Assembly (NCBI GenBank): GCA_002269645.1
Contig: NIVC01001097.1
Location: forward strand, 295,230-359,229
Origin: Macrostomum lignano
Lineage: Eukaryota
Direction of reading: 5' to 3'
DNA: 64,000 nt
Each line of letters opens with the position of its first letter. Within the stretch, counting starts at the first letter, position 1. Of this stretch, positions 1-57,130 are shown one piece after another. Under the pieces are notes generated by a model, which was not told where the DNA came from, ran no database searches, and worked only from the letters and a program-made list of their open reading frames with translations. Made by a program: the position numbers and the translations under genes.

Positions 1-390
1 AACTGCACATTCCACTCCCTAATCCCACAGTGGACTGACATCATCTGCACATTCCACTCCCTAGTCCCACAGTGGAATGACATCAGCTACACATTCCAAT
101 CCCTAATCCTACAGTGGAATGACATCAACTGCACATTCCACTCCCTAATGCCACAGTGGAATGACATCAACTGCACATTCCACTCCCTAATCCCACTGTG
201 GAATGACATCAGCTACACATTCCAATCCCTAATGCCACAGTGGAATGACATCAACTGCACATTCCACTCCCTAATGCCACAGTGGAATGATATCAACTGC
301 ACATTCCACTCCCTAATGCCACAGTGGAATGATATCAACTGCACATTCCACTCCCTAATCCCACAGTGGAATGACATCATCCGCACATTC
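1..390 (+). repeat. 42-bp tandem array whose unit is a branch point + acceptor + first ~28 nt of the DEPDC1 exon
   Basis: Unit CCCTAATCCCACAG|TGGAATGACATCAACTGCACATTCCACT; the last copy runs into the exon TGGAATGACATCATCCGCACATTCCG. Confidence 0.95.
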
Positions 391-18228: not shown

Positions 18229-19821
18229 TCAGTGCTGCCGATTAAGCAGTCGGTCGATAAGCGAGTGCAGAGCCTCACTGGCCGGCACAGCGGGCAGCTG
18301 GCTGAGCTGCCAGTGGGCCTCGCGGCAGTGCAGCTGGGCCAGCATCCGGGTCTGGCCAACGCCGTCGGCGCGGGCCACGCTGTCCAGAGCCAGCTGGAGG
18401 TCACCTGGACGGGAGAGCCGGCGGGCAACGGCGGCCCGCAGTTGCGGACAGGTCTGCATGGCGAACAGCACCGGCCCAGTGAGGACGCCGCGGCGCAGGT
18501 CGGCAGCACCAGCCGGCTTGCCCAGCTGGCCGTCAGAGGCCTCAAAATCTAGCAAGTCGTCAACCTGCGGGTCCGAGTAGGGTTGACGGGGAGAGCGACA
18601 GGGTCAGCTGGGCCGGGCTTTTAGACTTTCGAAAGCAGATTTTGATATTAAAAACGTCTTGAGAAGTTGGCATCAGTCTGGTAGGTGGTAGATACAGCGG
18701 AGTCTTCATCTGGACTCGAGAGTGGTGCATGAATTCATCATCTGGCATCAATATGTGGAATGGAACAGTGAGATGTTGCTGTGCTTCAGCAATATACCGG
18801 TATTCCCCGACGGGACTACTCAGCTATTAGTGGTAAAGAAAGCATTTTCTGAATCTTGGAAATCTCTCAGACGCTCACCAGCTGGAACGCCATGCCGATG
18901 CTGCGTCCGAGTTCGAATGCGGCTGCCGCGGTAGCCGGACTGGAGCCTGGCGCCAGAACTGCGGCGCACTTGGCCGAGTGCGCCAGCAGCGCGGCGGTCT
19001 TCCTATAAGTCCTGGCCAGGTAGCGGCTGAGGTCGCCGGTCTCGCCAAGCTGGTCGAGCTCGCCGCGCACCAGGTCGCTGATGGCTGTGGCCATGCCGCG
19101 GACAACCAGCGGGTGGCCAGTGCCGGCCAGCAGCTGAGAGGCCACGCCAATCATGTGATCGCCGGCCAGGACAGCGTCGCGATGGCCGAATCGGCTCTGC
19201 ACGGAGGCGGCGCCGCGGCGCAGGTCGGAGCCGTCGATGAGATCGTCGTGGATCAGCGAGGCGGAGTGGATCATCTCTGTCACTATGGCGACGGTGCGCT
19301 GCCGCTGGCAGGCCGGCGGACCGGCATTGCAGACGTGCGACACCAGCAGGACAAGCAAGGGCCTAACCAGCTTCCCGGGCGCGTCCAGATGGTGCCGCAT
19401 CATTAGGCTGAGTTTATCGGGCGCCGAATCGGGCGTCAGGTGAGTCCGCATGTCGGCCGCCAGGGTCGCCGTCTCGGCTTGGAGCTCCGAGAGCAGCCGC
19501 TCCGACTCGGGCGTAGGCGGCGTTGAGGATGAAGCGTCTTGGGCGCCGATGGCGGTCGCGCTGACGCGGGCGCGAACCGGCGCGCCAAAGCAGAAGCGGC
19601 GAGCGCAAGCGGCGCAGACGCGAAGCCTGCGTCAGGAAATGGAATTCAAACCGAATGAAAATAAATGCGGTGAAAATTGTACCAAGACTCGAGTGGCCAG
19701 GCATTGTCAGTGGGTAAAGCTTGACCTCACAATGGGTCGGAATAGCGTATATTTTAGCATCATAAAATATAATATTCAGAGTGCAATAAATCATATTATT
19801 GAGAACTCACCGAGAGTACAT
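18229..19821 (-). CDS. PDSS1: All-trans-polyprenyl (decaprenyl) diphosphate synthase subunit 1; exons 19821-19811, 19626-18879, 18564-18229 (364 aa)
   Basis: GKLVRP, EMIHSASLIHDDLID..RRG, LAGD, YRKTAALL, GMAFQL|VDDLLDF (both DDxxD motifs intact); Arg/Ala-rich transit-like N-terminus MYSRLRVCAACARRF; exons sum to 1095 nt. Confidence 0.9.
18668..18746 (-). ncRNA. C/D-box snoRNA, copy 1 (PDSS1 last intron)
   Basis: Minus strand: TGATGA attCATGCACCACT CTCGA gtccag ATGAAGA ..ATCTACCACCTACCAGA CTGA; box D is ~108 nt upstream of the acceptor. Confidence 0.8.
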
Positions 19822-21883: not shown

Positions 21884-24800
21884 CTCTAGCATGAATTATT
21901 GAATTATTGAAGTGGAATCAGGATCTAGATGGTCAATCCCAGGATTTTTTAATCCTGGACAATTGTGATCCCTGGATTTAGGCCTAATCCTGGGATCCCT
22001 GGATTTTATTCACTATCCAGCCCAAAACCCTGGGGTCATGTTCACTCTCCGCTGCCCACTTTGTAAAATCTTTGATGTTTGAGTTTAGTCTTGTTTACAT
22101 AATTTAATGTTGACTTTAAATTTTAAACTCATTGTGCATGTTGTGATAACCTTGACAATGTGAATGCCCACTGCCCAGACAGTAGTAGGTTGTGATTGCA
22201 AATGTAATATATACATTCATATTGCTTTGCACAGTGATACATGTACATTACATAATCTAATATATGTTATACATAAAATATATTATATAATATATATGCA
22301 TATTACAATATTGATATTATGAGTAGTAATATACTACTATAACATTCAATATATGAGTATAATAATATCATTGTTATAATGTTATATATTACATTTACCA
22401 GCCTAGCATTACCCCTTTAGCTCCTACCAGAAACTGTAAGCATTATAAAAAAAATATAGATACTTTATTGTCTTCAAATTATTTACTTGGGACTCCAAGG
22501 TTATAGCCAAAAAACCTAGGTCCCAAGGAGCAAATTTTCTAGGAAATTGACATTCTTAGATCATACCTCACCTCACAAGGGCACCTACCATAGATTGAGA
22601 ATTAGTAGCTTGGGGTTGTAGTTGTGGTCTGATTCCAACAATAACGTCCCACTGTTCTAATCCCAACTATAGCCAAGGAATTTTGAAGGTAGGGACTACT
22701 TAAAGTAGTTCTATTACCACCACTATGATAGGCATCTAAAGGGTGTATTGACACTTTGAGGTTTTTTGCATAGGGGGGGGGACTTTTGATCTGCACAAGG
22801 TTGAGACCCCTAATTTTAGATAAGTTATAGATAGATAAAGTTTAAATTAAATGAACAATAATTGAATTCCCCATCTGGCAAGCACTATGATTCATTTATT
22901 TTTTGTCATAAATGAACTGAAATTTTAGTATAGACACAAATTTTGGGCAAGGAGAAGCATGCTTGTTCAAGCTTTGAATCAGCCTTCAACTTTAATAGTG
23001 TGGTAGGGCTCCTAGAATTCATCATTAATTATGCTAATTATTGTTAATTACTAATGACTTACTAATGTGCAAAATCAATTCACTGGAAACTCATGCACAC
23101 GCAAGAACAAATAGGTTACTGTATATGTGTGACAAGAGGTCTACCAGTTGTTTTACTGCACTGATTCTGTGGGTATATAAATACAATGCGCACCAATTTG
23201 AATTTTCCTCAGATCTTGTTTGAATTTGGCCTCAGTTTCTTGTTTGAATTTCCACTCTTGTTCTCGTAGGCCCAGAGTTGCCTATTAGCCCGGACCATGT
23301 GCTCCCAGTCTAGTATTGTCTTGTGTAGGATTGGCCTTGTGTGCCTGACAATTTATTAGTTCATGACTAGCTATTAGTAACTAAATGAGTCTTAGTTAAG
23401 TGCAGCTCCTAAGTACTGAGTTAGTTTAGTCAAACCTAAATCTTAGCTCTAACAGACTATGTTGGTAAGGACATAGGAGGCTGAGCTTATCTTTGTGTTT
23501 TGTTGACTAATTATTGTTAAGGTTAATTATTATTTTCTGCTAGTGCGCTAGTTAATTATTTGTTTAATAATTACAATTGGCAGTTTGTTAAGTCATTGTT
23601 CAATTTAAGTTCAAATTCTAATTCAAATTATTCAAATCTTCCTTGATAGCGATTTTGGCTCAGTCATTTAATCATAGTTTTGATTGGTGATAGCAAACTA
23701 CCTTTCATGACATTTAGTTTGGGAATTGCTTGTCGATACATTGGGGAACATAACTTATCAAGAAAGGTACTGCCCTTCGACTGGTACAAAATAAGCAGTT
23801 TTGCCTTAGGCCAATTCTCAGAAAGCTACCAAAAGTTTAAGTTATTTGGGACTCCTGTCCACCTGGAAATAGAGAAACTAGTCACTCCACTCACTAAGAG
23901 TTCGTGGACAAGAGATCCATCTGAGCTAATAGGAACCAAGAGGCCCAGAAGGAAACTATAATTCCGCGAGCCATAGGGCCCATAGGAAATTGTAGGGCAC
24001 TTGCAACAAGAGGCCTGTCTTAGTCCCCCACTAAGTTTCGCAATCGTGATATATTACTTGTTGGCAGTAGCATGGTTCGCATCAATTTATTATTCAGACC
24101 AAATAAATAGCAACCTTTTACATTTTGTGGAACTGGCATTGGGATTAGCGTGAAGTATTTTGTTAGCAACTTAGAGGGCTGTTACATTTAGTGTCTTAGC
24201 AGTGGAATTTAGTAGTCAACATCGGAGTTTTTAATTAACCAGCACCGGTTACAATGGTTAGTTGAGAAATCTCTTTAAATGAGTTCTGATGAAATATTTT
24301 AAGAAGTGTTTTTCTATGTTAATTCATTTTCTAAGTGAAGTGAAGTAGTAGGAAGTGCATACAGTATATACTACTGAGAAGTAGAACATTAGAAAGAGAA
24401 AAAATACAAAGTAGATCTCAAAACATATAAGGGCCATGACCTGATCCTAGTAACACTCAGGACTGGAGAACATATATGTAGTACATATACCAGTAGACCA
24501 TATACTGCTCAGGCCAGGATAACAGAAAAATGCTACCAGAATAATAGTAGAACACTACCAGAATAATAGTAGAAAGCTACCTGTGAGAGTTTAAATTAAT
24601 ACTCAGATCAATACTTAGAATAATTCTCAGACAAATACTTAGACCTATGCTTAGATAAATACTCACAGACAAATATTTAGATATATGTGCAGACTGATTC
24701 TAAGAAATTTTCTCAGACTTATTCTAGGATAATAAATTTATAATAGAATAGTCTTAGTAGCAGCTACCAGCATTAGGAAATTAATATAGAGAAGTAAAGC

Positions 24801-25330
24801 CCTATCACAACTTTGGTGGCATTTTGTGAGATTTAATTAAAGACAGAGGAAGACCCCTACATCAGTATATATATCAGAGATAAAATGGATCTCTCATTTT
24901 TATGAGCAGAAAAAATATATATAAAATAAAAAAGTTGACAAATAATTCTAACCTTCTGCAAGCAGAACTCAGATATGGAAAAGTTGATAGAAAAAAGTTA
25001 ATGGAATACTTCATAGTTAATGTGATAGTTGACTAAATAGTTAATAGAAAATGATAAAAAAGTTAACAAAAATGTAAACAAGTAAATAAAAAAGTTAATG
25101 GCCAAAGTTATACTTACAACTTTTAGACCACTGCTAAATCATAACATAAGCTAAACTTTTATAGACACTAAAGAGCAGTTTTATTTTTTAAATTTAGGTC
25201 TAGCAATTGCTCAATGGATATAGTTTATTGAAGGCTATAAGTGAAATAAATAAACCCTACTAAACAAATCTAATATATTTTAATAATTTTTTAACAAATG
25301 CAAGTCTAAAATTTTTATTGTTACCCTTTT

Positions 25331-26422
25331 TGACGCGACGCAGACAAGGCTTGTTTAATTTGAACAATAATGCTCGCTGACCTGTTCCTGCTCCTGTTCG
25401 CTGACCTGGGGTTCAAGTGACTCTTGATGGACAGTCTTTGATCGGCAGACAGAGGCGAAGTGATTGCGCCTGTTGCAGCTCGCACACTTCTTTCCGTAGG
25501 CAGGGCAGCTTCCTTTTGCGTGACTACCCCCGCAGTATGAGCACTTTGATGAAGCATTGGACTTGGACTGACGTCTGGCGAAGGCTATCTCCAGTTGCTG
25601 CGGTTGTGTCGGGGCCACACTGTACTCTTGTATTTGCTCGATTTGTTCTAAGCTTTGCAGAATGTCGAGTCCTTTCGAGCACCCTGCGCCTGTGCTCTGC
25701 CGTAGCCAGACCGTCAATCAAGCGCATCGTTATCATATCATCTTCGATTGGTTGCTTCTTTCCCAGCTCCGCGAAGTCACAGCTAGCCGCCGCGGCACGA
25801 AGTCGTCGATAGTACGCAGCCGCCTTCTCGCCCTGCTCTTGCTTGATACCCAGGAACTTCATGCGTTCGGCTATGACAAGGCGCCGCTTGGGACGGATGG
25901 TGGCAGTTATCAGTTCTTTTATAGTTTCGAACTTCATGTCCTCCAGCAGTTTCGGTGCTGCGGCTAGCGAGAGAGTTCTGATTGCTGAAAGGCCAGCTGT
26001 GGCGAGAAAGAGATCTGTGACGTCCCGAGCTGTGTCCGAGTCACTCAGTTTCTTTATCCGAGCATTGGCAGCAAAGCTCAGAATCCAGGCTTCCGCTTGG
26101 TCCGGGTCGTCAAGATTCAGCTGTGTCTCCTTGTATCCTGCTTGCGACGCCATTGACGCGACGCAGACAAGGCTTGTTTAATTTGAACAATAATGCAGCG
26201 AACTGATATATTTGCTGAGTAAAAATTACAACGAAGAAAAGCTAGATTCAGTTATTTAAATATGTAGTGGTATAAAACGATATTTGAGTTATTGATAAAA
26301 GTTAGATTTGAAAGTACACTATGTGCGCATTGATGTACGCATGAGTGGGGTGGACGCTAGGCAGGGTAAGCAGGGCACAAAGTGAGTCAGTTTAATATCT
26401 AGCCAGTCAATAGTCAGCGACA
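25331..26422 (-). mobile_element. Internally deleted Gypsy (Mag-like) LTR retrotransposon: 5' LTR 26422-26154, frameshifted gag ~26153-25374, last ~43 bp of 3' LTR
   Basis: LTR TGTCGC...GCGTCA; 44-bp direct repeat 25330-25373 = 26153-26196; TSD CTTTT at 25326-25330 and 26423-26427; gag with IAERMKF and CSYCGGSH..CPAYGKKCASCNRRNHFASVC knuckles. Confidence 0.88.
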
Positions 26423-26658
26423 CTTTTGACTATTGCCCTTATGACTGTTGCCCTTTTTATCTATTGCCCTTTTTATTGGTACCCTAAATTACATGATCTA
26501 AAATGTAGTGCTTGCTATACCTAATGCTATACACAAGTAAAATTGAAAAAAGTAAGAAAATCAGGCTCCTACAAAAAACTTATCAATACCCAAGATCTGC
26601 AATAGCAATATTACTATGATACAAATAGACAATTTGCCAAAAACCTTTTGGCTAAACA

Positions 26659-27485
26659 TACATGCACAACAGTCAGCCGAGTTAGCCGATCTGGCTGACC
26701 AATTTGGTGGCCAACCAAGGTAAGTTGCAAAATGCCCATCTGAATAAATAAGTAGTACTAAGTAGATGACGAGGCATTTTGCCTTAATAAGACAGTTATA
26801 GTTACTCTTGCCATTTACCAAAAGTTGCGTTAATTTTGCTTTAAGGTTTCTTTTATATGTAAGTTGCATTTTGGCCCAAAAATATGTCACATTTTTGTTA
26901 GAACTAAGTTGCATGGCTGACTGAATTTTGGAGGTTGCGCATATATATGGCTAAAAGTCAATTCACCAAATGCCTTTTTGTCAAAAGTCAATTTACAAAA
27001 AACCTGATTGGGAAACTGATATCTAATAATTCAAATTGCAATATTAGCAATGTATTTGGAGGCGCATGACCAAGATGGCCATATACCAAGATGGCCACAG
27101 CTTTAAATGTCTAAATAGATAATAATAAGACTAGGTACATATATTTAACTCCTTTCCTTTTTTAGCAATTAGGAAAATAGATGTTATAATACATACATGC
27201 GCAACAGTTGGCTGAGTCGGCCAATCTAGCCAACCAATTTGGCAGCCAATCAAGGAACTCGCAAAAATGCCCACCCAAAAAATACCAAAGTAGTAGTACT
27301 AAGTAGCTGATGAGACATTTTGACTTAATAAGACAGTCATAGTTACTCTTGCCATTTATCTAAAGTTGCGTTAATTTTGCTTTAGGGTTTTTTTACATGT
27401 AAGGCACATTTTTGGCCAAAAACTACGTCGCATTTTTGTTAAAAAACTAGTTGCATGGCCGACCAAATTTTGGAGTTTGCGCATG
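26659..27485. mobile_element. Two copies (26659-26944, 27196-27485) of a ~290-bp TA-flanked MITE
   Basis: TA-CATGCGCAA...TTGCGCATG-TA termini on copy 2; copies alignable throughout. Confidence 0.65.
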
Positions 27486-27947
27486 TATATTATTATAGAA
27501 TTGTATTATAATCATTCCCTTTGGACTTAGGCCTAGCTTTTATTGTAGCCTGACCTGTAGGAGCTTACTTATTTATCTACTATGTGAAGCAAGTAACCTA
27601 GCACAAAATAAATACCCTATGACATTCATATATTTATCCTAATTATTTGCATAGCTAGCATTACCATTAGCAATAGTTTTTAATAAACAGATCGTGATAG
27701 ATTTGATAGATGTGATGATAGAGAATAAATTGGCACAAACACTAAAAAAGATTAAACGTTTTATATTATAAGTAGGCCTAATTAGTTTCAAATCTATTTT
27801 TGTATTAGTATTTATGAATATAATTGATTAAACAAAAATAATTTAATATATTATATTGCTAATTAATGATAGATAGAAAGAGAATAGATATAATAAATAT
27901 TCAATATTGTAGCCATCTTGGTGTGTGGTCATCTTGGTCTTATACCC
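27060..27947. mobile_element. Inverted-repeat element hosting the second 290-bp MITE
   Basis: GACCAAGATGGCCATATACCAAGATGGC at the left end is inverted as GCCATCTTGGTGTGTGGTCATCTTGGTC at the right end. Confidence 0.5.
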
Positions 27948-29319
27948 TTTTGCATAAGGTTGTAATTTTTTTTTTATTAATTGTCATTGCCAAAAATTTT
28001 TTATTGATTATCAATTATAAAACACTTGTTCCTATTGCCATTGGTGAAATTCTTTTAATTTTATAAAAAAATATTTGGAAAATAATTTTTGTGTAACAAC
28101 TACTATATGCTGTATTGTAGTTAAGCTGATATATATTGAAAGATATTTTTCCTTCCTAAAAAGACATTTTTCATATTAATAAGCAATATACTAATAGTAA
28201 TACAAATTATTATTATTTTCTCCTTTACTCAACAAATCAATAATGAATTAAGAGTAGCTTACAATGCAGTAAAATGAGTAAACTCCCTGTAATTTGTAGG
28301 CCTAGGCTACTGTTCTATAAGCCACAATGTGCATGTATTTTATATTGTGTTACTTGTGTTATTGTGTTATGCAAAATGTTACTATTATGTAATAAGTTTT
28401 CAATATCTTACTTTTGAAAAATGGTATCCAGAAAGTAGGATAACTAATATAACTTAGTTCAAAAACCTTAGTAGTAGTCTCAAAGGAATACAATCCACTT
28501 CAGTACTCAGCCATTTTGGTCACAGCCACTTTGGTAACAAAGCAGAGCAACACTTTATTTTTATGATATTTAGGTTTAGCAATAATTAGTTTAATAATTT
28601 TCATCTCAAATATCTTATTGCCACATATGGCTAAACTTTCTAGTTGAACTGCATTATAATTCGTTTAAACTTGCGCATTAACTTTGTGAAAAAAAATGGA
28701 AGGCAAAGAAAATTAAGCAACCAGTGAGCTCGAGCATACTGTATAGTCATAGAAATTGAAAAATTAAATAATGAATGAAAAAGAAAGTAGATTCTATAAT
28801 TTTAAGTCAGAGATTCTAATGTAAATGATAGGCCTACACAATATTTGGTCAACTACAGGATGTCTCGGGTGCATGTATCTGACTCATCTGAAAATTAAAA
28901 TAGATCGGCTAAAAATGGTTCACTTTTAAACAAGTTAAACAGATGCAGGTACGCATGTGTTTTGTCGTTCTTTCTTTCAAGTTTGTTCGCACATTCTTTC
29001 AGAGCATATCAATTAATACATCTTTGTATTAACTCAGATCTATATTATATTATTCTAACTTGCTGTTGTTACCGAAGTGGACTGTTACCACTCAAAGTAA
29101 ATCACTCAATAATACAATAATACATCTAGAGGTAGTAGAGGGTTCTAGGCGCCTATAACAAATAATAAATAATAAAACTTTAATAAGTTAGGCCTAGTAT
29201 TCTACTATATCAAGTTATTTGTGAAATCTAACGGGCACCCATACCCAAATCTTCGAAGTCAACTTTGAACACAAAACTTAAAACCGACCGACCGAACGTC
29301 CCGTGAAGTGCAAGCCGGG

Positions 29320-29697
29320 GGGTCTCCCTAAAAGACGCCCCGCACCGCCCTGCAGTGCTACACATTAAAACAAATTGGACTATAACTGAAGACAGTTCAA
29401 AATGCGTTTTCTGTTAAGCTTCAAAGTTTTTATTAAATTTAGTTTTTTTACTTTGAAATAAAAAATTCGGTGAGTAAGAAGTGATATTAATAATAATATT
29501 AAAAAATAATAATAATTTAATTTAATAATGAAAACGAGAATATAAAAAAGAAAATTATGTTTAAAATAATAATTATAGATATTTATTCCATTACTCTTAC
29601 AACAAATAGTTTTTCTTGCAATCGTATACTGCATTGACAAAAAATGTTATAATGTGTAGCGGTTCGGGGCGGTGCGGTGCGTGTTTTAGGGAGACCC
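29320..29697. mobile_element. Mutator-like MITE
   Basis: ~47-bp TIRs GGGTCTCCCTAAAA.ACGC.CCGCACCGCCC...GCTACACATT; 9-bp TSD CAAGCCGGG at 29311-29319 and 29698-29706. Confidence 0.85.
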
Positions 29698-30772
29698 CAA
29701 GCCGGGCCAGATTTTGTATAAAAAACAAAAGTATAACAATTTTTTTACTTTATTTTGTCTACCAAGTTATTGACACAAAACACTAAATTTTCATAAACTA
29801 TAATTATTTAGTGCGCATATTTTTCAACACGATTTGTTTAGTCGCCATGCTTTTCGTCGTCTTAGTATCAAGGAGTACTTAAGTGCAAGGACTACTTGAG
29901 TGGTCATTTTTGCCTAGTATATGATTTTCGACTTTGGTTTCGACTTAAGATCTATACTGATTGAGCGACTAAGTGAGGTCGTCCCAGATCTCGATGGAAG
30001 TAATGGGAATGCTTGTTAAAAATGATAGAAAAGAATTCCTCAACTTTTTTAAGACCACAATAGAACAGCCAATGCTGACAGTTTGCGAACAAAATTTAAA
30101 AAATATATATTTCTCCACAGGAATTAATAATGATTGTACCACAGGTGATGCCTGTTTAAACTTTAGTAAAAAATAACGCTAAGCAACAGAGCCAGTGCAT
30201 GGGAATTATAACCTTATTTAGTAATGTATATTAGGAGTATTTTAAGACTTAAGAGACAGCATGTCCTACTTGAACTTAAATAATGACTATGATTTTTGTT
30301 TAAAAGAGCAATAATATGAAGCACTTGTAAAGTAAAATCAGTTAAAAACTTACCTAAAAACACTAGACAGACCAGCATTACTTGATAGACGTACAGCTCC
30401 GCAAAGATGCGCACAATAACCGATATTCGGGCGCATAAAACTTGATTTATCTAAATCTACGTATATCTTCAACCTGCTAGGATGAGAGCAGACAGAGAGC
30501 GCAGTAGGGTATAGGGATGGGCAAGAGTATTGAGATTAAAACTTTATAATAGATCGTAAAAATTAGAAAAATCGATAAACATAATCGACCGATATCAAAA
30601 CCATCAGTTATTTATTTTTAATTATACTAAATCCTAGATCCTGAAGAGCATAAAAAGGGCAAAATGAGCTAAGTTGATCATCCATGCAGCAGAGAAAGCG
30701 TGATATTGAATACGTAACTTAAATGTATATAAATAAATATTATTCAGCCTGGGCCCTGGCTGGGATGGCTGC

Positions 30773-33700
30773 TCAGTCGTGCACCTCCTCGGTTACTGAA
30801 TCAGCAGATGGCACAGGTAGCTGCTCCAGCTGCTGCACCTTCTGCGGCTGCTGACGGTCACCGTCACCCGCTTTCTCATCGTCCTGCAGAAAAAGCGAGC
30901 GGGAGGGCGCGGCCTCGAGCTCCTCCTGAGTGAGCACCCGCACCGCATACTCCCCATCAATATCGGCCAGTCCGTGCACCTCCACCGGCTTGTTGCCCTT
31001 CAGCAGCTTGGCCAGGTAGGACGTGATGGGTGGGGTGATCACCTGGCCTGGCACTAGCACCGGGATGCCGGGTGGGTAGGCCAGCACCTGGTCGCAGCAG
31101 ACGCGGCCAGTAAGAGCCTCGTTCGGCCTGCGGATAGATAGCGGATGGGCGGGATAGATAGCGGATGGTGGGGTAGATATCGGATGGTGGGGTAGATAGC
31201 GGATGGGCGGGGTAGATATCGGATGGTGGGGTAGATAGCGGATAGGCGGGTAGATAGCGGATGGTGGGGTAGATAGTGGATAGGCGGGGTAGATAGCGGA
31301 TGGGCGGGGTAGATAGCGGATGGGCGGCGGGGTAGATAGCGGATGGGGGGTAGATAGCGGATGGGCGGGGTAAATAGCGGATGGCGGGGTAGATGGCGGA
31401 TGGGCGGCGGGGTAGATAGCGGATGGCGGGGTAGATAGTGAATAGGCAGGGTAGATAGCGGATGGGCGGGGTAGCTAGCGGATGGGCGGCGGGGTAGATA
31501 GCGGATGGCGGGGTAGATAGCGGATGGCGGGGTAGATAGCGGATGGCGGGGTAGATAGTGAATACGCGGGGTAGATAGCGGATGGGCGGGGTAGATAGCG
31601 GATGGGCGGGGTAGATATCGGATGGGCGGCGGGGTAGATAGCGGATGGCGGGGTAGATAGTGGATAGGCAGGGTAGATAGCGGATGGCGGGGTAGATATC
31701 GGATGGGCGGCGGGGTAGATAGCGGATGGCGGGGTAGATAGTGGATAGGCAGGGTAGATAGCGGATGGCGGGGTAGATAGTGAATAGGCGGGGTAGATAG
31801 CGGATGGGCGGGGTAGATAGCAGATGGGCGGCGGGGTAGATAGCGGATGGCGGGGTAGATAGTGGATAGGCGGGGTAGATAGCGGATGGCGGGGTAGATA
31901 GTGGATAGGCGGGGTTGGAGAGCGGGCGTGTCACTCACCGGCCATCATCGTCCAGCAGGTAGAGACACTCGCCCGACTCGTAGAAAGCGCTGCGCGGCAG
32001 GCAGGCCAGCCGGCTGAAGTGCGGCACCTCCGCCATCCGGTAGGACTGCTTCGGCACCCGGCGCCGGTCCTTGGCCAGGCGGAACATGGCGTCGCACAGG
32101 CGGGACACCTTGCTGCGGGTGGTGCCTACGCCCAGCAGCAGCGTCAGCGTGCTGAATGTCGACTTCTCGCCCTGGATGTTGTACTTGTCGAACAGCACCT
32201 GGCATTGATGGTCGGGAAGGTTTTAAAATTCTGTATAGTCAGTGCATTCGACTTTTCTACTTTGATTCCTTAGGCGCGACACAAAATTATTTTTTAATTT
32301 TACAGTGAGAATCCTGTTGTGTTGTGCACTTTTACGGTGCCTGTGTACCTGCCTCCCAGCGGGCTGGGGTCACCCCTCAACTAGTTGTTTACAGTACTTT
32401 TTGTTATTCCCCCCTTTGCGTTGCCGCAGCCAGAGGCTTAAGTCGGTGTGAGTTTTGGCATTTGTTCGCTCGCCCTGCGTGGTGATTGGTCGCGGCCAGC
32501 CAGTCGCGTAGTGATTGGCTGGGCCGGTGGCGGGCGTGGTGCTGACGTCCCCCGGGGGGAATGGCTGGGGGGTTGGTGGGGTGGTGGAGTTGAGAGCGCG
32601 TGGCCCTCCCCCCTCCGCGGGCGTGTGCTATTTAACATCGCTCGCGGCGGATTGGAGCGGTGCGCGTCTCGACTGTCCCCTCTCTGTGAACTCGATTTTT
32701 CGTCAGAGCTATATACACCGAAAAAGGCCATCTACCTGAGCCCTGAGCGACAGCCGCCAGCTAAGTAAGTGCGCATTCTGCCTTTTTTCTTTCGGTTGCC
32801 TAGGGGGGCAGAGAGTCCGTGTGTCCGGACACCGACTCAGCTAGTTGGGGTTGATACCAGTACGTCAGAAGGATACCTACCGTACGCCTCTACGCCTCTA
32901 CGCCAGCCAGTGCGTCCCGACGCCTCGCTGAAGGCGGCCCGCACCACTGCGTCCCGACGCGTGGGAAGGCTGCGTGGGTGCGTCCTGACGCCCCAGACTG
33001 TCAGGGGAAGTGCTCGCCCTAGCGCCCGCGTGCAGGCTTAGCAAGGACCCGATTGTACTGTACCCTGGTAGGACTACCCTACTGCCGGGCCGGGGGCTGC
33101 AGGGATACAACAATCCCTTCAAATCCAACAATGAAAAACTCATATTCACTGACATCCCAAAGTGAGGACTAAAACTCGCTCAAATCCCACAAACCTGTTC
33201 CATCTCGTCGGCGCTGTAGCCAGACTTGGAGATGTCCACAGTCAGCTTGGTGGGGTCCAGCCGAACCCCGTCATTGCGCACCTCATCGGGCAGGAGGTCG
33301 CCGATGTCCAGTACGCGGAAGACGCCGGTGGAGTTGATTTTCTGGCGAAGTTCAGCGCCCAGTTTGAGGGTCCGGTCCAGCAGCTTGTAGCCCTCCATCA
33401 TTGCCTGCTTCCGGCCAACGTCCAGGCTGGCGATGAGAGCGTACTGTGGGCTCGTGGAGGCGTACATGTTGAAGTTCTCACGGAACAGGTGCTCGTCGAA
33501 CTCCGGGTCGTTGACGTGGACCATGCTGGCCTGCGAGAAGGAGGTCAACGTCTTGTGGATGCTCTGCGTTACGTAGTCGGCGCCGCACTCCAGCGCGGTG
33601 GGCCGGAAGGCCGGATGGAAGCGGGCGAAGGCGTACCAGGCCTCGTCAATGATCACCTGCGGGATTTGGTGGCGTTGGGAGCGCGGGTTCCGAAATTGCA

Positions 33701-34831
33701 AAGTGGCATCCCGGTTATGAAAGGTTCATGAGATGCTTTGAAACACATTGACTATAACAACGGCACCAAGCCGATTCAAGCGTTTAAAGGCAGCACTAAA
33801 GTACTCAGGCGGCATCCGTATAAACAAACCTTGATGCCGGCCTTGTGCGCAGCCTCAACAATGGGCTTCAGGTCGTACAGCATACCATCGTAGGTGCAGC
33901 AGGTGAGAATGAGCGCCTTGGCGTCCGGATTCTCCTTGATAGCCCGGTAGATGGTGGCCTTCGGCACAGGGCCGAAGATGCCGAACTCCCTGCACACGGA
34001 GGAGTCCAAGTAGATGGGCCGAGCGTCCGACAGGATCACGCCGTGGTGGACGGACTTGTGGCAGTTGCGGTCCAGCAGGAGCTTGTCGCCCGGGGCCAGC
34101 AGAGTCTGGAAGATGATCTTATTGGTGGTGGAGGTGCCGTTGGTGGCCAGATAGGTCTTGCGGGCGCCGAAGGCCGTGGCGGCCAGGTTCTGGGCGGTGG
34201 CGATGACCCCAGTGGGGTGCAGCAGCGAGTCCAGCATGGGCACGGAGACCGACAGGTCGGCCCTGAGCAGATTCTCCCCCACGAACTCGTAAAAATCGCT
34301 GACCCAGGGCGAGTTCTTGAGCGAGTCACCGCCAGAGTGACCGGGCGAGTGCCAGGAATCCTTGGCCATCTTCACATAGGCCTGCAGCGCATCGTAGAAC
34401 GGCGTGGCGGACTTCTCGGCCAGCTCGGCGGACAGGATGCGGAACCAGCCGTGGTAGTCGGGCTCGTCCCGGTCGAAGTAGCCGTCCACGGCGTGGCTGA
34501 CCAGCTCCTCCACCATGGCGCGCTCGTCATCGCTGAGCACAACATAGAGGGACAGCTCCGGCCGCCAGGAGTTGATGCGGTTGGCCAGGTCCAAGGCCGC
34601 CTGGCCGGCGCCGAGGCCGGCCAGCGACTTGTCAATCACCACCAGCTGCAGGTCGCCGTCCGCCTTCACCGTCTGCATGGCGTGGTCTCCGGTGTGCGCG
34701 GACACGAATGCGATGCCGAACGGGTTGTCAAGGCGAGCGCTGGCCGAGGCCAGGCCGCTCAGAGCCGGCTCCAGCCAGGCCGCGTCGTTGCTGACGACCA
34801 GCGCACGGCTTACCGGCTTTAGCGACGGCAT
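30773..34831 (-). CDS. Bacterial-type PLP-dependent Orn/Lys/Arg decarboxylase with N-terminal receiver-like wing domain (692 aa); exons 34831-33830, 33656-33195, 32198-31939, 31127-30773
   Basis: WHSPGHSGG, NGTSTTNK, LLDRNCHKSV, IDEAW, QSIHK (PLP lysine), STSPQY, YPPGIPVLVPG; three GT-AG introns with phases 0/0/2; exons sum to 2079 nt with no stop. Confidence 0.93.
31135..31915. repeat. 19-23-bp minisatellite filling decarboxylase intron 3
   Basis: GGGGTAGATAGCGGATGGC variants, running to within ~10 nt of the acceptor. Confidence 0.95.
32409..33170 (+). other. GC-rich antisense insert in decarboxylase intron 2 with Pol II promoter motifs and a micro-intron; possibly a retroelement 5' end
   Basis: ATTGG 32485 and 32514, GGGCGTGG, TGACGTC 32543, TATTTAA 32629, GTAAGT..TAG 32765-32803. 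Confidence 0.4.
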
Positions 34832-34879
34832 GGCCTGCTGCGAGCAGCAGAAGGAGATTTGAGTCCGGCTCTGCCACTG

Positions 34880-36125
34880 CAGGGGTCTGGCTTTATTTAC
34901 TGCTGGGGTCTGGCTTTATTTACTGCTGGGGTCTGGCTTTATTTACTGCTGGGGTCTGGCTTTATTTACTGCAGGGGTCTGGCTTTATTTACTGCAGGGG
35001 TCTGGCTTTATTTACTGCTGGGGTCTGGCTTTATTTACTGCTGGGGTCTGGCTTTATTTACTGCTGGGGTCTGGCTTTATTTACTGCTGGGGTCTGGCTT
35101 TATTTACTGCTGGGGTATGGCTTTATTTACTGCAGGGGTCTAGCTTTATTTACTGCAGGGGTCTGGCTTTATTTACTGCTGGGGTCTGGCTTTATTTACT
35201 GCTGGGGTCTGGCTTTATTTACTGCAGGGGTCTGGCTTTATTTACTGCAGGGGTCTGGCTTTATTTACTGCTGGGGTCTGGCTTTATTTACTGCTGGGGT
35301 ATGGCTTTATTTACTGCTGGGGTCTGGCTTTGCCACTGCTGGGGTCTGGCTTTATTTACTGCAGGGGTCTGGCTTTATTTACTGCTGGGGTCTGGCATTA
35401 TTTACTGCTGGGGTATGGCTTTATTTACTGCTGGGGTCTGGCTTTATTTACTGCTGGGGTCTGGCTTTATTTACTGCTGGGGTCTGGCTTTATTTACTGC
35501 TGGGGTCTGGCATTATTTACTGCTGGGGTCTGGCTTTATTTACTGCTGGGGTCTGGCTTTATTTACTGCTGGGGTCTGGCTTTATTTACTGCTGGGGTCT
35601 GGCTTTATTACTGCTGGGATGGGGCCTGATTCCGCTGGGGTGGGGTCTGATTCTGCTGGGGTGGGGTCTGATTCTGCTGGGGGGGTCTGATTCTGCTGGG
35701 GTGGGGTCTGATTCTGCTGGGGTGGGGTCTGATTCTGCTGGGGGGGGTCTGATTCTGCTGGGGAGGGGTCTGATTCTGCTGGGGGGGTCTGATTCTGCTG
35801 GGGTGGGGTCTGATTCTGCTGGGGAGGGGTCTGATTCTGCTGGGGTGGGGTCTGATTCTGCTGGGGTGGGGTCTGATTCTGCTGGGGAGGGGTCTGATTC
35901 TGCTGGGGGGGGTCTGATTCTGCTGGGGTGGGGTCTGATTCTGCTGGGGAGGGGTCTGATTCTGCTGGGGTGGGGTCTGATTCTGCTGGGGAGGGGTCTG
36001 ATTCTGCTGGGGGGGGTCTGATTCTGCTGGGGAGGGGTCTGATTCTGCTGGGGGGGTCTGATTCTGCTGGGGAGGGGTCTGATTCTGCTGGGGGGGTCTG
36101 ATTCTGCTGGGGTGGGGTCTGATTC
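34880..36125. repeat. Two adjacent minisatellites: 23-bp (CTGGGGTCTGGCTTTATTTACTG) and 21-bp (CTGGGGTGGGGTCTGATTCTG)
   Basis: Tandem copies; switch at ~35620. Confidence 0.95.
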
Positions 36126-37304
36126 TACTATCAACTAAGACAGTGAAAATACAGACAACACAAAGACCGCTGAGTTCCTGATCCAGACTAAAACACTGTC
36201 CTTGGTCCAAAGACAAAAGGATGAAATTATCAATAAATTTATTAATAAACAGGAATTAGCAAAATGGTGAATACAAAGCGGAATACTAGAGCGCGCCGGC
36301 TGCCGAAAACAGTATAGGGAAGTCGGCACTGGCAGGCATAAAATATAAGGCGTTTTCTATCCTAAATTGGAATCACGTAGAAAAATTTACATCATTTTTC
36401 TCCTTATTCATCACCCTACTACTATTAAGTAGGAATAAGTGAAAATAGAAATTAAAAAAAGGCGAAGGCCGCTGCCAGAGCCGGAAATGTTAATAAATGG
36501 AGACAGAGGAAGACGGTGACTCGAGTGCGGAATGAGCTGCTGGGCCCTGCCTCAGTTTACTGATAGGCTTGAATACAATAGAAACTAAACTGCTGAAAAA
36601 GTGGCTCTCAGTAAAACTCCTAAAGGTTCGTTGAGTTCAGTGCGATTGAAAAAGTTCACTGAAATGAGGCTCTGGGTGAGACGACACAACAGGACAGGGA
36701 GCTGCGCAATGCTGCTAATCGTGTATGGGATAAAGACTGAGTATGCTGAGTACAGTACGCTGAGCACGTGCAGTATGCACAGCAAATATACAGTATGCTG
36801 AGTAGCTGAGTAGCTCAGGCGGGCCGGGCAGCGCCAGTCTCAATTTTCTGCTTCATTCTCCGAGCCGCTGGTGCTGCTAAAGCGTTGTGGAGCCAAAGAG
36901 GAGCTTGGCCTGCGGGTTGCAATGGGGCGATTTGGGACCCGTCAATAAGATGTAAGCTGGTCAGACTGGCTGCGGAATTAGTCCATAAATTTGGCCTGCA
37001 CAAAGCGGTAACTACTACTATAAATACGAGTTTGCTTAGATGCGTGAACTCTGCAGGCTGGCGGCTTGAAATGGTTAGGCATGTGAGCGATAGGTTGGGG
37101 ATAGACTTTGCGGCCAGGGAGGCCCTTCTACATGTACATGGAGTAGATAGCAACCAATTTACAGGTGCTGTGAGGCGCTAGGGTGAGCTAGGATTGACGC
37201 CACAGCTGCATCCTTGAGGTCCTCCACCTGAGCTCAGACCACGTCCCGACCTGCGGCCGTTCGCAGAACGAGAAATCGCGGAAATCGGCGACGAACTTGA
37301 GCGG

Positions 37305-37520
37305 GGCCGGATGCGGAACCGGATGCGGAACCGGATGCGGAACCAGATTCGTAACTGAATATGGAACTAGATCCGGAACCAGATACGGATCCGGAACCAG
37401 ATACGGATACAGATACGGAACCAGATACGGATCCGGAACCAGATACGGATCCGGAACCAGATCCGGAACCAGATCCGGAACCAGATCCGGAACCAGATGC
37501 GGAACCAGATGCGGAACCAA
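37305..37520. repeat. 12-bp-based repeat (GATCCGGAACCA)
   Basis: Tandem variants. Confidence 0.9.
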
Positions 37521-38027: not shown

Positions 38028-38184
38028 CTGGCCCACCTACCTCTGGCCAAGCCGGTCGAACTTCCTAGACAGCGACGGCGAGCGCTTCTGCTTGAATTGG
38101 TGCGCGGGTTTTCGGGCTAAACAGGCTGGGCGAGGACTTGCACACTGCTGGCTAATTGGCTAATTGGCTAATTGGCTAATTGGC
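38028..38184 (-). promoter_or_regulatory. Four tandem CCAAT boxes and putative non-coding first exon of the decarboxylase gene
   Basis: (GGCTAATT)x4 at 38150-38184; CAG|GTGAGC donor at 38027; acceptor CAG|GCCATG at 34835. Confidence 0.45.
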
Positions 38185-38373
38185 AAAACACCCGGGAGCA
38201 GCGTGCGGTGGCTCAAAGAAGCAAAATGGAACATAAAAATCTATTTTTCTCTTCAAAACCCAAGGTTGAAAAAGAAACAGTGGCAATGAGAAGGAACTGG
38301 AGCAAACCGAGCACAACACATTCTAGTAAAACAAAAGGTGCAGTTTTCTGTTTAAATGTAACCGAATACCAAA

Positions 38374-57130
<18,757 letters not shown>

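What the first reader, a model, noticed from the sequence alone, without database searches (positions are those of the whole stretch)
30773..34831. Bacterial-type basic amino acid decarboxylase as an intact, intron-containing animal gene (probable domesticated horizontal transfer)
Seen: a 692-aa ORF with wing (receiver-like), PLP-binding and C-terminal domains, all catalytic motifs present, interrupted by three canonical introns, one filled by a host-style minisatellite, and flanked by animal genes and transposons. This argues against contamination. Established: the AdiA/CadA/LdcC/SpeC AAT-fold family is prokaryotic with sporadic protist members, whereas animal ornithine decarboxylase has the unrelated alanine-racemase fold. 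Inference: the host gained a separate route to agmatine, cadaverine or putrescine, probably outside antizyme control, possibly for pH or osmotic stress, polyamine supply or signalling. The substrate cannot be assigned from sequence by eye.
Basis: partly seen in the sequence, partly recalled or inferred. Interest (0 to 1): 0.85.

Follow-up and report, generated by a model that had tools for sequence, protein, structure and literature searches.

The report
Bacterial amino-acid decarboxylase gene in flatworm
The flatworm Macrostomum lignano carries an intact, intron-bearing, apparently expressed copy of a PLP-dependent amino-acid decarboxylase that it acquired long ago from a Chromobacterium-like bacterium, an enzyme type otherwise almost unknown in animals.

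Summary
On the minus strand, four exons (34831-33830, 33656-33195, 32198-31939, 31127-30773) joined across three GT-AG introns encode a 692-aa protein. It has a receiver-like wing, an OKR_DC_1 PLP domain and the family's C-terminal domain.

The window is Macrostomum lignano. The protein matches GenBank BOX15_Mlig029890g1-g3, annotated only as hypothetical. I found no paper describing it.

Horizontal transfer is strongly supported:
- The nearest non-flatworm relatives are betaproteobacterial proteins of 652 aa, 70-76% identical (Chromobacterium, Aquitalea, Gulbenkiania).
- The flatworm sequences nest inside that clade with 98-100% bootstrap support.
- Two further assembly loci carry the same gene with the same three introns. 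A KANK gene lies upstream at all three loci.
- GenBank's gene models come from RNA-seq-derived transcripts.

New here: M. lignano has a second paralogue, 74% identical, next to an ENaC-type channel gene. The two form one clade. In both, changes avoid bacterially invariant positions (7% versus about 40%). This indicates one old transfer, a duplication, and long purifying selection.

The substrate is unproven. The best PDB match, Rv2531c, is a glutamate decarboxylase, but its specificity residues are absent here. The bacterial homologues sit beside argD-argF-argG, which favours ornithine or arginine.

Flanking transposons were not confirmed.

The parts
33830..34831 (-). Exon 1 (codons 1-334). 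ATG at 34831. Encodes the receiver-like wing (residues ~8-141), the linker and the first half of the PLP domain.
   Evidence: translation. (Pfam PF01276 from residue 143). (wing seen by profile alignment and in the AF2 model).
33657..33829 (-). Intron 1, 173 nt, phase 0, GT-AG. It is identical in all three genomic copies. It sits at an AAG|GT site that is also present in the closest bacterial gene.
33195..33656 (-). Exon 2 (codons 335-488). Contains the D338-E-A-W motif, the S-I-H-K369 PLP-lysine motif and the S-T-S-P loop.
32199..33194 (-). Intron 2, 996 nt, phase 0, GT-AG. It is only 194 nt in the paralogous copy L003.
32316..33111 (-). An insertion of about 796 nt inside intron 2, flanked by a GGATT target-site duplication. 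It is present in the window and L002 and absent from L003. It is probably a non-autonomous mobile element.
   Evidence: plus direct reading.
31939..32198 (-). Exon 3 (260 nt; codons 489-575, the last one split). Contains the G-E499-K-S-T motif.
31128..31938 (-). Intron 3, 811 nt, phase 2, GTGAGT...CAG. It is 746 nt in L002 and 604 nt in L003.
31135..31915 (.). Minisatellite that fills intron 3. The unit is 19-20 nt (TAGATAGCGGATGGGCGGGG), about 39 copies. The copy number differs between the genomic copies.
30773..31127 (-). Exon 4 (codons 575-692 plus the TGA stop at 30775-30773). Encodes the Y-P-P-G-I-P motif and the C-terminal domain.
30776..30886 (-). A 37-codon C-terminal extension beyond the position of the bacterial stop codon (QDDEKAGD...EEVHD). 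It is predicted to be disordered. It is present in all three DC1 copies and absent from the DC2 paralogue and from bacteria.
34876..36126 (.). Two minisatellite arrays (23-nt and 21-nt units). They start 45 nt upstream of the ATG, in the spacer between KANK and the decarboxylase gene.
38040..49387 (-). 3' exons of the upstream host gene, a KANK (KN motif and ankyrin repeat) homologue on the same strand. The same neighbour is found in the two other genomic copies.

Best explanation
This is a genuine nuclear gene of the flatworm Macrostomum lignano (here called DC1). It descends from a single, old horizontal transfer of a 'winged' fold-type-I (AAT-fold) PLP-dependent amino-acid decarboxylase. 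The donor was a betaproteobacterium related to today's Chromobacteriaceae.

After integration the gene:
- gained three spliceosomal introns, at least one at a pre-existing AAG|GT site;
- lost its stop codon and gained a 37-residue disordered tail;
- duplicated into two paralogues (DC1 and DC2, 74% identical).

DC1 now exists in three near-identical copies, because the sequenced DV1 line carries duplicated chromosomes.

Shown here: the gene structure, the bacterial ancestry, the linkage to KANK, and retention of the catalytic residues under purifying selection.

Inferred: the protein is an active homo-oligomeric PLP enzyme. Lys369 would hold PLP as an internal aldimine, the substrate amino acid would displace it, and CO2 would be lost from the external aldimine. 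The most likely substrate is ornithine or arginine, with lysine possible. That would give the worm a second route to putrescine, agmatine or cadaverine, structurally unrelated to the canonical alanine-racemase-fold ODC.
For: Identity. The protein matches M. lignano proteins A0A1I8HZQ0, PAA72361, PAA72828 and PAA62975 at 99-100%.

Bacterial ancestry. The next-best hits are bacterial 652-aa proteins at 76-65% identity over 94% of the query, with no other eukaryote in the top 120. The best of them, P0003, sits on a contig with dnaB, flagellin, argF and argG. In NJ trees, DC1+DC2 are monophyletic in 100/100 replicates. They are sister to P0003/P0004 in 98-99/100 and nest within Aquitalea, Chromobacterium, Gulbenkiania and Pseudogulbenkiania sequences.

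Integration. There are three GT-AG introns. Two other Mlig_3_7 contigs (197 and 369 kb) carry the same introns, and a KANK gene lies upstream at all three loci. Intron 2 has a mobile-element insertion that is polymorphic between copies. The minisatellite copy number also varies between copies.

Expression (indirect). GenBank models for this assembly are RNA-seq-derived transcripts mapped to a PacBio/Canu assembly. Their exon structure equals the one I derived from sequence alone.

Selection. Only 19-20 of 265 bacterially invariant columns are changed in DC1 or DC2, against 143-149 of 363 variable columns (Fisher p 1e-21 to 1e-23). All PLP and catalytic motifs are retained.

Fold. The AF2 model's top Foldseek matches are Rv2531c, AdiA and LdcI/LdcC over ~740-770 columns.

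Substrate hints. DC1 has S375 where Rv2531c has the glutamate-binding R576. It has E499 (in G-E-K-S-T) where Rv2531c has N731, matching the V-E-K-T motif of the lysine decarboxylases LdcA and LdcC. In Betaproteobacteria the homologue is followed on the same strand by an argD-like aminotransferase in 46 of 50 loci. argF and argG follow in 30 of 31 loci with enough sequence.
Against: - No enzyme assay exists for this protein, and I found no characterised member of its 652-aa bacterial subfamily.
- NCBIfam scores (200-244 bits) are far below the cutoffs (794-1310) of every characterised Ldc, Adi or Spe equivalog.
- The best PDB match by sequence is a glutamate decarboxylase, not a basic-amino-acid decarboxylase.
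- I saw no RNA-seq reads directly, and no Logan-assembled transcript with this exact product is on record.
- Several positions that are invariant in bacteria are changed in both paralogues. One is the residue just before the His-Lys of the PLP motif (T to I or S). Others are H399Y and R318L. These could reflect altered activity.
- dN/dS among the three DC1 copies rests on only 8-11 differences and is uninformative.
- The trees are distance-based, not maximum likelihood.
- Many of the bacterial loci used for the synteny count are near-duplicates from metagenomes.
Confidence: 0.88

Rival explanations
1. The gene is truly horizontally acquired and active, but it is not a basic-amino-acid decarboxylase. 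It would act on another substrate (for example glutamate to GABA, as Rv2531c does). Alternatively it would catalyse a variant PLP reaction, and in the worm serve signalling, defence or another non-polyamine role.
For: Rv2531c, the top sequence and fold match in the PDB, is a glutamate decarboxylase. The same study notes that most clusters of IPR000310 have no verified function. No characterised equivalog is matched. Both worm paralogues changed several bacterially invariant positions near the active site. Plant 'bacterial-like' members of the family have been reported to evolve new alkaloid-pathway functions (title and abstract only).
Against: The proposed glutamate determinants of Rv2531c are not present: R576 corresponds to S375 and N731 to E499. 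The extra N-terminal domain is also absent. S375 and E-K-[ST] match the lysine decarboxylases. The bacterial homologues are tightly linked to argD-argF-argG.
Confidence: 0.2
2. The gene is an integrated but functionless relic. It would be transcribed at noise level or not at all, and would look intact only because too little time has passed for it to decay.
For: No direct expression data were seen here. The DC2 paralogue is missing from the RNA-seq-based GenBank annotation. dN/dS among DC1 copies is based on very few changes.
Against: DC1 and DC2 have diverged by 26% in protein sequence. Both keep full-length open frames, and both changed only 7% of bacterially invariant sites against about 40% of variable ones. 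That pattern is not expected under neutral decay. A DC1 gene model exists in a transcript-derived annotation with the correct splice junctions.
Confidence: 0.05
3. The gene is bacterial contamination or a chimeric misassembly, not worm DNA.
For: The high identity (up to 76% protein, 78% DNA) to free-living betaproteobacteria, and the GC-rich coding sequence.
Against: The reading frame is broken by three spliceosomal-type introns, which bacteria lack. Two further assembly loci on 197-369-kb PacBio contigs show the same structure, and KANK lies upstream at all three loci. Introns contain host-type minisatellites and a polymorphic insertion. GC3 (0.87) is in the range of neighbouring host exons (0.66-0.90).
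Confidence: 0.01
4. The gene was inherited vertically: an ancient eukaryotic or animal gene lost almost everywhere else.
For: The OKR_DC_1 family does occur sporadically in eukaryotes, namely plants, Paulinella and Apicomplexa.
Against: The worm sequences nest deep inside one family-level betaproteobacterial clade with 98-100% bootstrap, at 70-76% identity. No eukaryotic sequence other than M. lignano is among the best 120 hits. The eukaryotic members described in the literature belong to other subfamilies: the wing-less 'ancestral' form or the four-domain Rv2531c type.
Confidence: 0.02

Closest known systems
Uncharacterised 652-aa winged decarboxylases of Chromobacteriaceae and other Betaproteobacteria (for example Chromobacterium phragmitis, Aquitalea magnusonii, Gulbenkiania mobilis; variously auto-annotated as ornithine or arginine decarboxylase)
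   Same: They are 70-76% identical to DC1 over the whole bacterial length. The three-domain architecture is the same, and all invariant residues of the PLP site are shared. The worm genes nest inside this clade.
   Different: The worm gene has three introns, a 37-aa C-terminal tail and two extra N-terminal residues. It has changed about 7% of positions that are invariant in bacteria, and it has lost the argD-argF-argG neighbourhood. I found no published activity for any member of the bacterial group.
Enterobacterial and Pseudomonas winged AAT-fold decarboxylases: LdcI/CadA, LdcC, LdcA, AdiA, SpeC/SpeF
   Same: They share the fold, the wing + PLP + C-terminal domain order, the S-x-H-K PLP lysine and the S-Q-A-S motif. 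The E-K-[ST] motif is shared with the lysine decarboxylases.
   Different: Identity is only about 21-28%. NCBIfam scores are far below every equivalog cutoff. The protein is 652-692 aa rather than 710-756 aa. Oligomeric state and substrate are unknown.
Mycobacterium tuberculosis Rv2531c (PDB 9N0O/9N0N), a glutamate decarboxylase of the OKR family
   Same: It is the best-scoring solved relative by sequence (E 4e-80; profile 4.5e-108) and by fold. The receiver-like domain and catalytic core are shared.
   Different: Rv2531c has an extra N-terminal domain (947 aa). It has R576 and N731 where the worm protein has S375 and E499.
Other bacteria-to-animal horizontal transfers of metabolic enzymes that acquired introns and host expression (known from my own reading in bdelloid rotifers, plant-parasitic nematodes and insects)
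   Same: Same kind of event: a bacterial enzyme gene fixed in an animal nuclear genome, with introns, linkage to host genes and purifying selection.
   Different: I know of no previously described animal case involving the AAT-fold Orn/Lys/Arg decarboxylase family. [quoted passage not shown]
Animal ornithine decarboxylase (alanine-racemase fold, antizyme-regulated)
   Same: It would catalyse the same chemical class of reaction if DC1 acts on ornithine. M. lignano is mentioned in the antizyme survey PMC1874602, though I saw only the search hit.
   Different: The fold is unrelated (established knowledge; PMC8503589). There is no reason to expect antizyme binding, but that was not tested.

Membership tests
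Fold-type-I (AAT-fold) Orn/Lys/Arg decarboxylase family, Pfam OKR_DC_1 / InterPro IPR000310 | Major PLP-binding domain PF01276 above the gathering score | tested here: met
   338.8 bits against a cutoff of 27, covering residues 143-518 and the full model length.
Fold-type-I (AAT-fold) Orn/Lys/Arg decarboxylase family, Pfam OKR_DC_1 / InterPro IPR000310 | C-terminal domain PF03711 | tested here: met
   34.0 bits against a cutoff of 24.2, residues 518-620.
Fold-type-I (AAT-fold) Orn/Lys/Arg decarboxylase family, Pfam OKR_DC_1 / InterPro IPR000310 | PLP-attachment lysine in the S-x-H-K...S-Q-[STA][STA] signature | tested here: met
   T-Q-S-I-H-K369-T-L-T-S-F-S-Q-A-S, read directly from the translation. 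It aligns to K570 of Rv2531c. UniProt names the paralogous copy by this site.
Fold-type-I (AAT-fold) Orn/Lys/Arg decarboxylase family, Pfam OKR_DC_1 / InterPro IPR000310 | Decarboxylase activity on an amino acid | not testable with these tools
   This needs recombinant protein and an assay.
Extended ('winged') form of the family | N-terminal CheY/receiver-like wing domain | tested here: met
   Pfam PF03709 is not reported. However, the family profile aligns from residue ~6 onto the wings of LdcA and Adc. AF2 also gives a confident beta-alpha x5 domain at residues 8-141.
Characterised subfamilies LdcI/CadA, LdcC, AdiA, SpeC, SpeF (NCBIfam models) | Score above the curated cutoff of the subfamily model | tested here: not met
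   Scores were 243.6 (cutoff 968), 223.4 (1056), 203.1 (1310), 200.7 (1167) and 200.2 (794) bits. The protein is not a member of any characterised subfamily.
Rv2531c-type glutamate decarboxylases | Four-domain architecture with an extra N-terminal domain (~947 aa) | tested here: not met
   DC1 is 692 aa and its alignment starts at Rv2531c residue ~150. The feature is described in PMC13506015.
Rv2531c-type glutamate decarboxylases | Arg576 (proposed gamma-carboxylate contact) and Asn731 | tested here: not met
   The equivalent residues are S375 and E499 in DC1, and the same in DC2 and the bacterial relatives.
Bacterium-to-animal horizontally transferred gene | Phylogenetic nesting within a bacterial clade | tested here: met
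   NJ bootstrap of 98-100 for placement inside Chromobacteriaceae-type sequences. This is a distance method only.
Bacterium-to-animal horizontally transferred gene | Physical linkage to bona fide host genes, and spliceosomal introns | tested here: met
   KANK lies upstream at all three loci, and the gene has the same three GT-AG introns in each.
Bacterium-to-animal horizontally transferred gene | Absence from other animals / restricted taxonomic distribution | tested here: inconclusive
   No other eukaryote is in the best 120 hits of three searches. Macrostomum relatives and other flatworms could not be searched specifically.
Bacterium-to-animal horizontally transferred gene | Spliced expression in the host | not tested
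   The evidence is indirect only. The GenBank gene models derive from RNA-seq transcripts and match my exon structure. No reads were examined.

The most novel reading that the evidence does not exclude
An animal lineage has kept, for a long evolutionary time and in two diverged paralogues, a bacterial winged AAT-fold decarboxylase. The enzyme would have been re-tuned after transfer: both paralogues changed residues that are invariant in bacteria, next to the PLP lysine and the phosphate loop. It would make a product that animals do not normally make this way, such as cadaverine or agmatine (or GABA by a non-GAD route). The worm would use that product for something specific to it, such as defence, adhesion, reproduction or osmotic or pH tolerance in intertidal sand, outside the canonical ODC-antizyme circuit.
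Probability: 0.2. Interest if true: 0.75.

Novelty: new member of a known kind. Interest (0 to 1): 0.62.

Why it matters
Well-supported cases of bacterial genes working in animal genomes are still few, and each shows how animals can gain metabolism they did not inherit.

[quoted passage not shown] A retained, duplicated animal copy would add an animal lineage to that range. It would also give a second, structurally unrelated amino-acid decarboxylase in an animal that is a genetic model, with RNAi and transgenesis available, so the function is directly testable.

The case is also a caution. Since the 2026 Rv2531c work, the label 'Orn/Lys/Arg decarboxylase' can no longer be taken as a substrate assignment.

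Finally, the conserved placement of the bacterial homologue in front of argD-argF-argG points to an uncharacterised betaproteobacterial enzyme that is worth assaying in its own right.

Tried and rejected
- **Base composition as a transfer signal.** GC3 of the gene (0.87) lies within the range of neighbouring host exons (0.66-0.90), so composition says nothing either way.
- **Assembled transcripts.** I looked up the exact protein, and queried with the C-terminal 228 aa that spans two exon junctions and the worm-specific tail. No Logan-derived transcript or orthologue from another Macrostomum species turned up. The tail query instead revealed the DC2 paralogue.
- **Closer donors or relatives.** Scans of one genome per GTDB species and of JGI metagenomes gave only intron-less bacterial genes at 47-71% identity. 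These scans depend on exact peptide patterns and missed Chromobacterium itself, so they do not bound the donor.
- **DNA of the DC2 locus.** It is not on record, so its introns and dN/dS against DC1 could not be determined.
- **dN/dS among the three DC1 copies.** Values were 0.19-0.27, but from only 8-11 differences. Unique non-coding sequence differs just as little (about 0.4%), so the copies are too recent to be informative.
- **Published expression values.** Mlig029890 was absent from all main texts searched and from the one paper of three checked whose supplementary files were held.
- **Operon with KANK.** The spacer is about 3.2 kb (about 1.7 kb after removing tandem repeats), above the 1-kb criterion used for M. 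lignano operons. The sequence upstream of the ATG does not fit the [T/C]TNCAG trans-splice motif well. I did not pursue this further.
- **Transposons flanking the gene.** No transposase or RT domain was found in 29 ORFs, and no tRNA-like element was found.
- **Contamination and vertical inheritance.** Both were considered and rejected (see the rival explanations).


Full report
**1. What is in the sequence**

Reading the minus strand of 30600-35000 and joining four segments gives a 2079-nt frame with no internal stop, encoding 692 residues. The segments are 34831-33830, 33656-33195, 32198-31939 and 31127-30773.

The three intervening segments are 173, 996 and 811 nt. Each begins with GT and ends with AG. 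The donors are GTTTGT, GTTTGT and GTGAGT, and every acceptor is CAG. These fit the splice motifs reported for M. lignano, GT[G/A]AG and CAG (PMC8629364).

Intron 3 is almost entirely a 19-20-nt minisatellite with 39 copies. The host spacer immediately upstream of the ATG carries two further arrays with 23- and 21-nt units. Tandem repeats are reported to make up about 15% of this genome.

**2. What the protein is**

Pfam finds the Orn/Lys/Arg decarboxylase major domain (E 5e-101) and the family's C-terminal domain.

The N-terminal 140 residues get no Pfam hit. However, a profile built from 32 family members aligns from about residue 6 onto the wing domains of P. aeruginosa LdcA and Providencia Adc. 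An AlphaFold2 model (mean pLDDT 73.8) shows a confident five-stranded beta-alpha domain at residues 8-141. The last 38 residues are disordered. Foldseek returns only winged AAT-fold decarboxylases at the top: Rv2531c, AdiA, LdcI, LdcC, LdcF, LdcA and ODC.

The PLP lysine (K369 in S-I-H-K), D338-E-A-W, H258-K259, the S-T-S-P loop and Y-P-P-G-I-P are all present.

**3. Whose genome, and where the gene came from**

The protein matches Macrostomum lignano entries at 99-100%: UniRef A0A1I8HZQ0 and GenBank PAA72361, PAA72828 and PAA62975 (BOX15_Mlig029890g2, g1 and g3). These are annotated only as hypothetical or domain-containing proteins.

Every other hit among the best 120 is a protein of about 645-682 aa from Betaproteobacteria. 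The best are two unnamed Logan contigs at 76%. Next come Chromobacterium, Gulbenkiania, Aquitalea, Pseudogulbenkiania and Vogesella at 70-73%, then Ideonella, Leptothrix and others at 65-68%. The 76% hit lies on a plainly bacterial contig with dnaB, flagellin, argF and argG.

In neighbour-joining trees the worm sequences are sister to those two contigs in 98-99 of 100 replicates. They sit inside the Chromobacteriaceae group. At the DNA level the worm CDS is 78% identical to the closest bacterial gene.

**4. Why it is not contamination**

- The frame is interrupted by introns.
- Two further contigs of the PacBio/Canu assembly GCA_002269645.1 (369 kb and 197 kb) carry the same gene. It has the same three intron positions and an identical 173-nt intron 1. 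A 1524/1525-aa ankyrin gene lies upstream on the same strand at both.
- In the window that neighbour's ankyrin domain hits KANK1, KANK2 and KANK3 structures first (E 3e-60).
- The copies differ in host-like ways. The intron-3 minisatellite is 811, 746 or 604 nt long. Intron 2 is 996 or 995 nt in two copies but 194 nt in the third. The difference is a ~796-nt insertion flanked by a GGATT duplication.
- Three near-identical copies are expected, because the sequenced DV1 line has extra large chromosomes and 180 Mb of duplicated blocks that are at least 95% identical.

**5. Expression**

I could not look at reads. The GenBank annotation of this assembly consists of transcripts assembled from RNA-seq and mapped to the genome. 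Its 692-aa products require exactly the splicing I inferred from sequence. This is indirect support only.

No exact-product transcript is on record among the Logan assemblies. I found no paper or held supplement that mentions Mlig029890.

**6. A second paralogue, and what it says about age and selection**

A query with the C-terminal third found a different M. lignano protein family, A0A1I8HIJ3 and A0A1I8GP85. Its decarboxylase part, DC2, is 74% identical to the window's protein, DC1. It is 75% identical to the closest bacterium.

In the older ML2 gene model, DC2 is fused to a downstream amiloride-sensitive sodium-channel (ASC) domain, which is an animal family.

DC1 and DC2 share many residues that differ from all bacteria, for example Y-A-F-A-R-F, N-M-Y-A-S-T-S-P, I-Q-G-E-K and F-Y-E-S-G-E. 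They are monophyletic in 100/100 replicates. This argues for one transfer followed by duplication in the worm lineage. The duplication is old enough for 26% protein divergence.

Of 265 alignment columns invariant in 66 bacterial sequences, only 19 (DC1) and 20 (DC2) are changed. Among 363 variable columns, 149 and 143 differ from the bacterial consensus (p about 1e-23 and 3e-21). Both genes have therefore evolved under purifying selection for the ancestral fold and active site.

The worm branches are about 30% longer than bacterial ones relative to an outgroup.

Some bacterially invariant positions changed in both paralogues. These include the residue before H368-K369, plus H399Y, R318L, G269D and P591. 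This may mark a functional adjustment.

**7. Changes since transfer**

- Intron 1 lies at AAG|GT, and the same nonamer is present in the bacterial gene, making it a proto-splice site.
- The bacterial stop position is read through into 37 extra residues, which are acidic and Gln-rich and predicted to be disordered. DC2 lacks this tail.
- The bacterial gene neighbourhood is gone.

**8. Function**

The family name is not a substrate assignment. The top PDB match, M. tuberculosis Rv2531c, was shown in 2026 to be a glutamate decarboxylase. The same study stresses that most clusters of this InterPro family are uncharacterised. NCBIfam scores are a quarter or less of the cutoffs for LdcC, CadA, AdiA, SpeC and SpeF.

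Two lines of evidence still favour a basic substrate:

- Rv2531c has R576, proposed to bind the gamma-carboxylate, and N731. At those positions the worm proteins and their bacterial relatives have Ser (S-Q-A-S) and Glu (E-K-S/T). The lysine decarboxylases LdcA and LdcC have the same residues there. The worm proteins also lack the extra N-terminal domain.
- In Betaproteobacteria the homologue heads a conserved same-strand array, with murJ divergent upstream. The decarboxylase is followed by an argD-like class-III aminotransferase, then argF, then argG. The aminotransferase is present in 46 of 50 loci with enough downstream sequence. argF and argG are present in 30 of 31. Many of these loci are related metagenome contigs, so the counts are not independent.

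This ties the enzyme to ornithine or arginine metabolism. My best estimate is an ornithine or arginine decarboxylase, with lysine possible. I put about 0.65-0.7 on a basic substrate and about 0.2 on something else.

**9. Comparison with what is known, and novelty**

The protein works like, and by domain criteria belongs to, the winged AAT-fold decarboxylase family. It is not a member of any characterised subfamily.

The phenomenon, bacterial enzyme genes fixed in animal genomes, is known. The particular family is not known from animals as far as I could find. [quoted passage not shown] Later work adds plants, Paulinella and Apicomplexa. Searches for Macrostomum with horizontal transfer, or with decarboxylase, found nothing on this gene. 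I therefore rate it a new member of a known kind.

**10. Limits**

- The trees are distance-based.
- Other Macrostomum species and other flatworms could not be searched.
- No reads were examined.
- No assay exists.

Noticed in passing
Not in the window; proteins P0124 / P0244 (UniRef A0A1I8HIJ3, A0A1I8GP85): M. lignano has a second, diverged paralogue of the bacterial-type decarboxylase (DC2, 74% identical to DC1). It lacks the C-terminal tail. In the ML2 gene model it is fused to a downstream amiloride-sensitive sodium-channel (ASC/ENaC) domain. It is absent from the RNA-seq-based GenBank protein set. The model also lacks 12 residues (K-I-I-F-Q-T-L-L-A-P-G-D) where DC1 has no intron, which hints at a DC2-specific intron.
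   Followed up: partly
window 32316-33111 (inside intron 2): An insertion of about 796 nt flanked by a 5-bp GGATT duplication. It is present in the window and locus L002 (99.5% identical) but absent from L003. No other copy is in the window, and no ORF domain or tRNA-like part was detected. It is probably a non-autonomous mobile element.
   Followed up: partly
Bacterial loci L001, L004-L068: In Betaproteobacteria the homologous decarboxylase gene sits in a strongly conserved array: murJ (divergent), then the decarboxylase, an argD-like aminotransferase, argF and argG. I found no characterised member of this 652-aa subfamily. The linkage suggests an unassayed ornithine- or arginine-linked enzyme.
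   Followed up: partly
window 34876-36126, 37310-37519, 38589-38950, 39350-39768, 40400-41023: A dense run of minisatellites (units of 12, 21, 23 and 25 nt) and a (GACA)156 microsatellite in the KANK 3' region and the KANK-decarboxylase spacer. The long GC-skewed 'ORFs' listed there are artefacts of these repeats.
   Followed up: no
window 18867-19451 (-) and 148-957 (+): An exon-sized ORF encodes a long-chain (solanesyl/decaprenyl-type) polyprenyl-diphosphate synthase, likely the coenzyme-Q pathway PDSS homologue. A second ORF has a DEP domain. Both are ordinary host genes as far as checked.
   Followed up: partly
window 22000-30700: There is a sharp drop in GC (0.31-0.38 against 0.51-0.59 across the gene) immediately 3' of the decarboxylase stop codon. 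The content of this AT-rich block was not examined.
   Followed up: no
window 53770-56025 (-): A 751-aa ORF with no Pfam match lies upstream of the mapped KANK 3' exons on the same strand. It may be the large low-complexity central exon of the 1524-aa KANK-like gene. No KN-motif hit was obtained for it or for the neighbouring ORFs.
   Followed up: no
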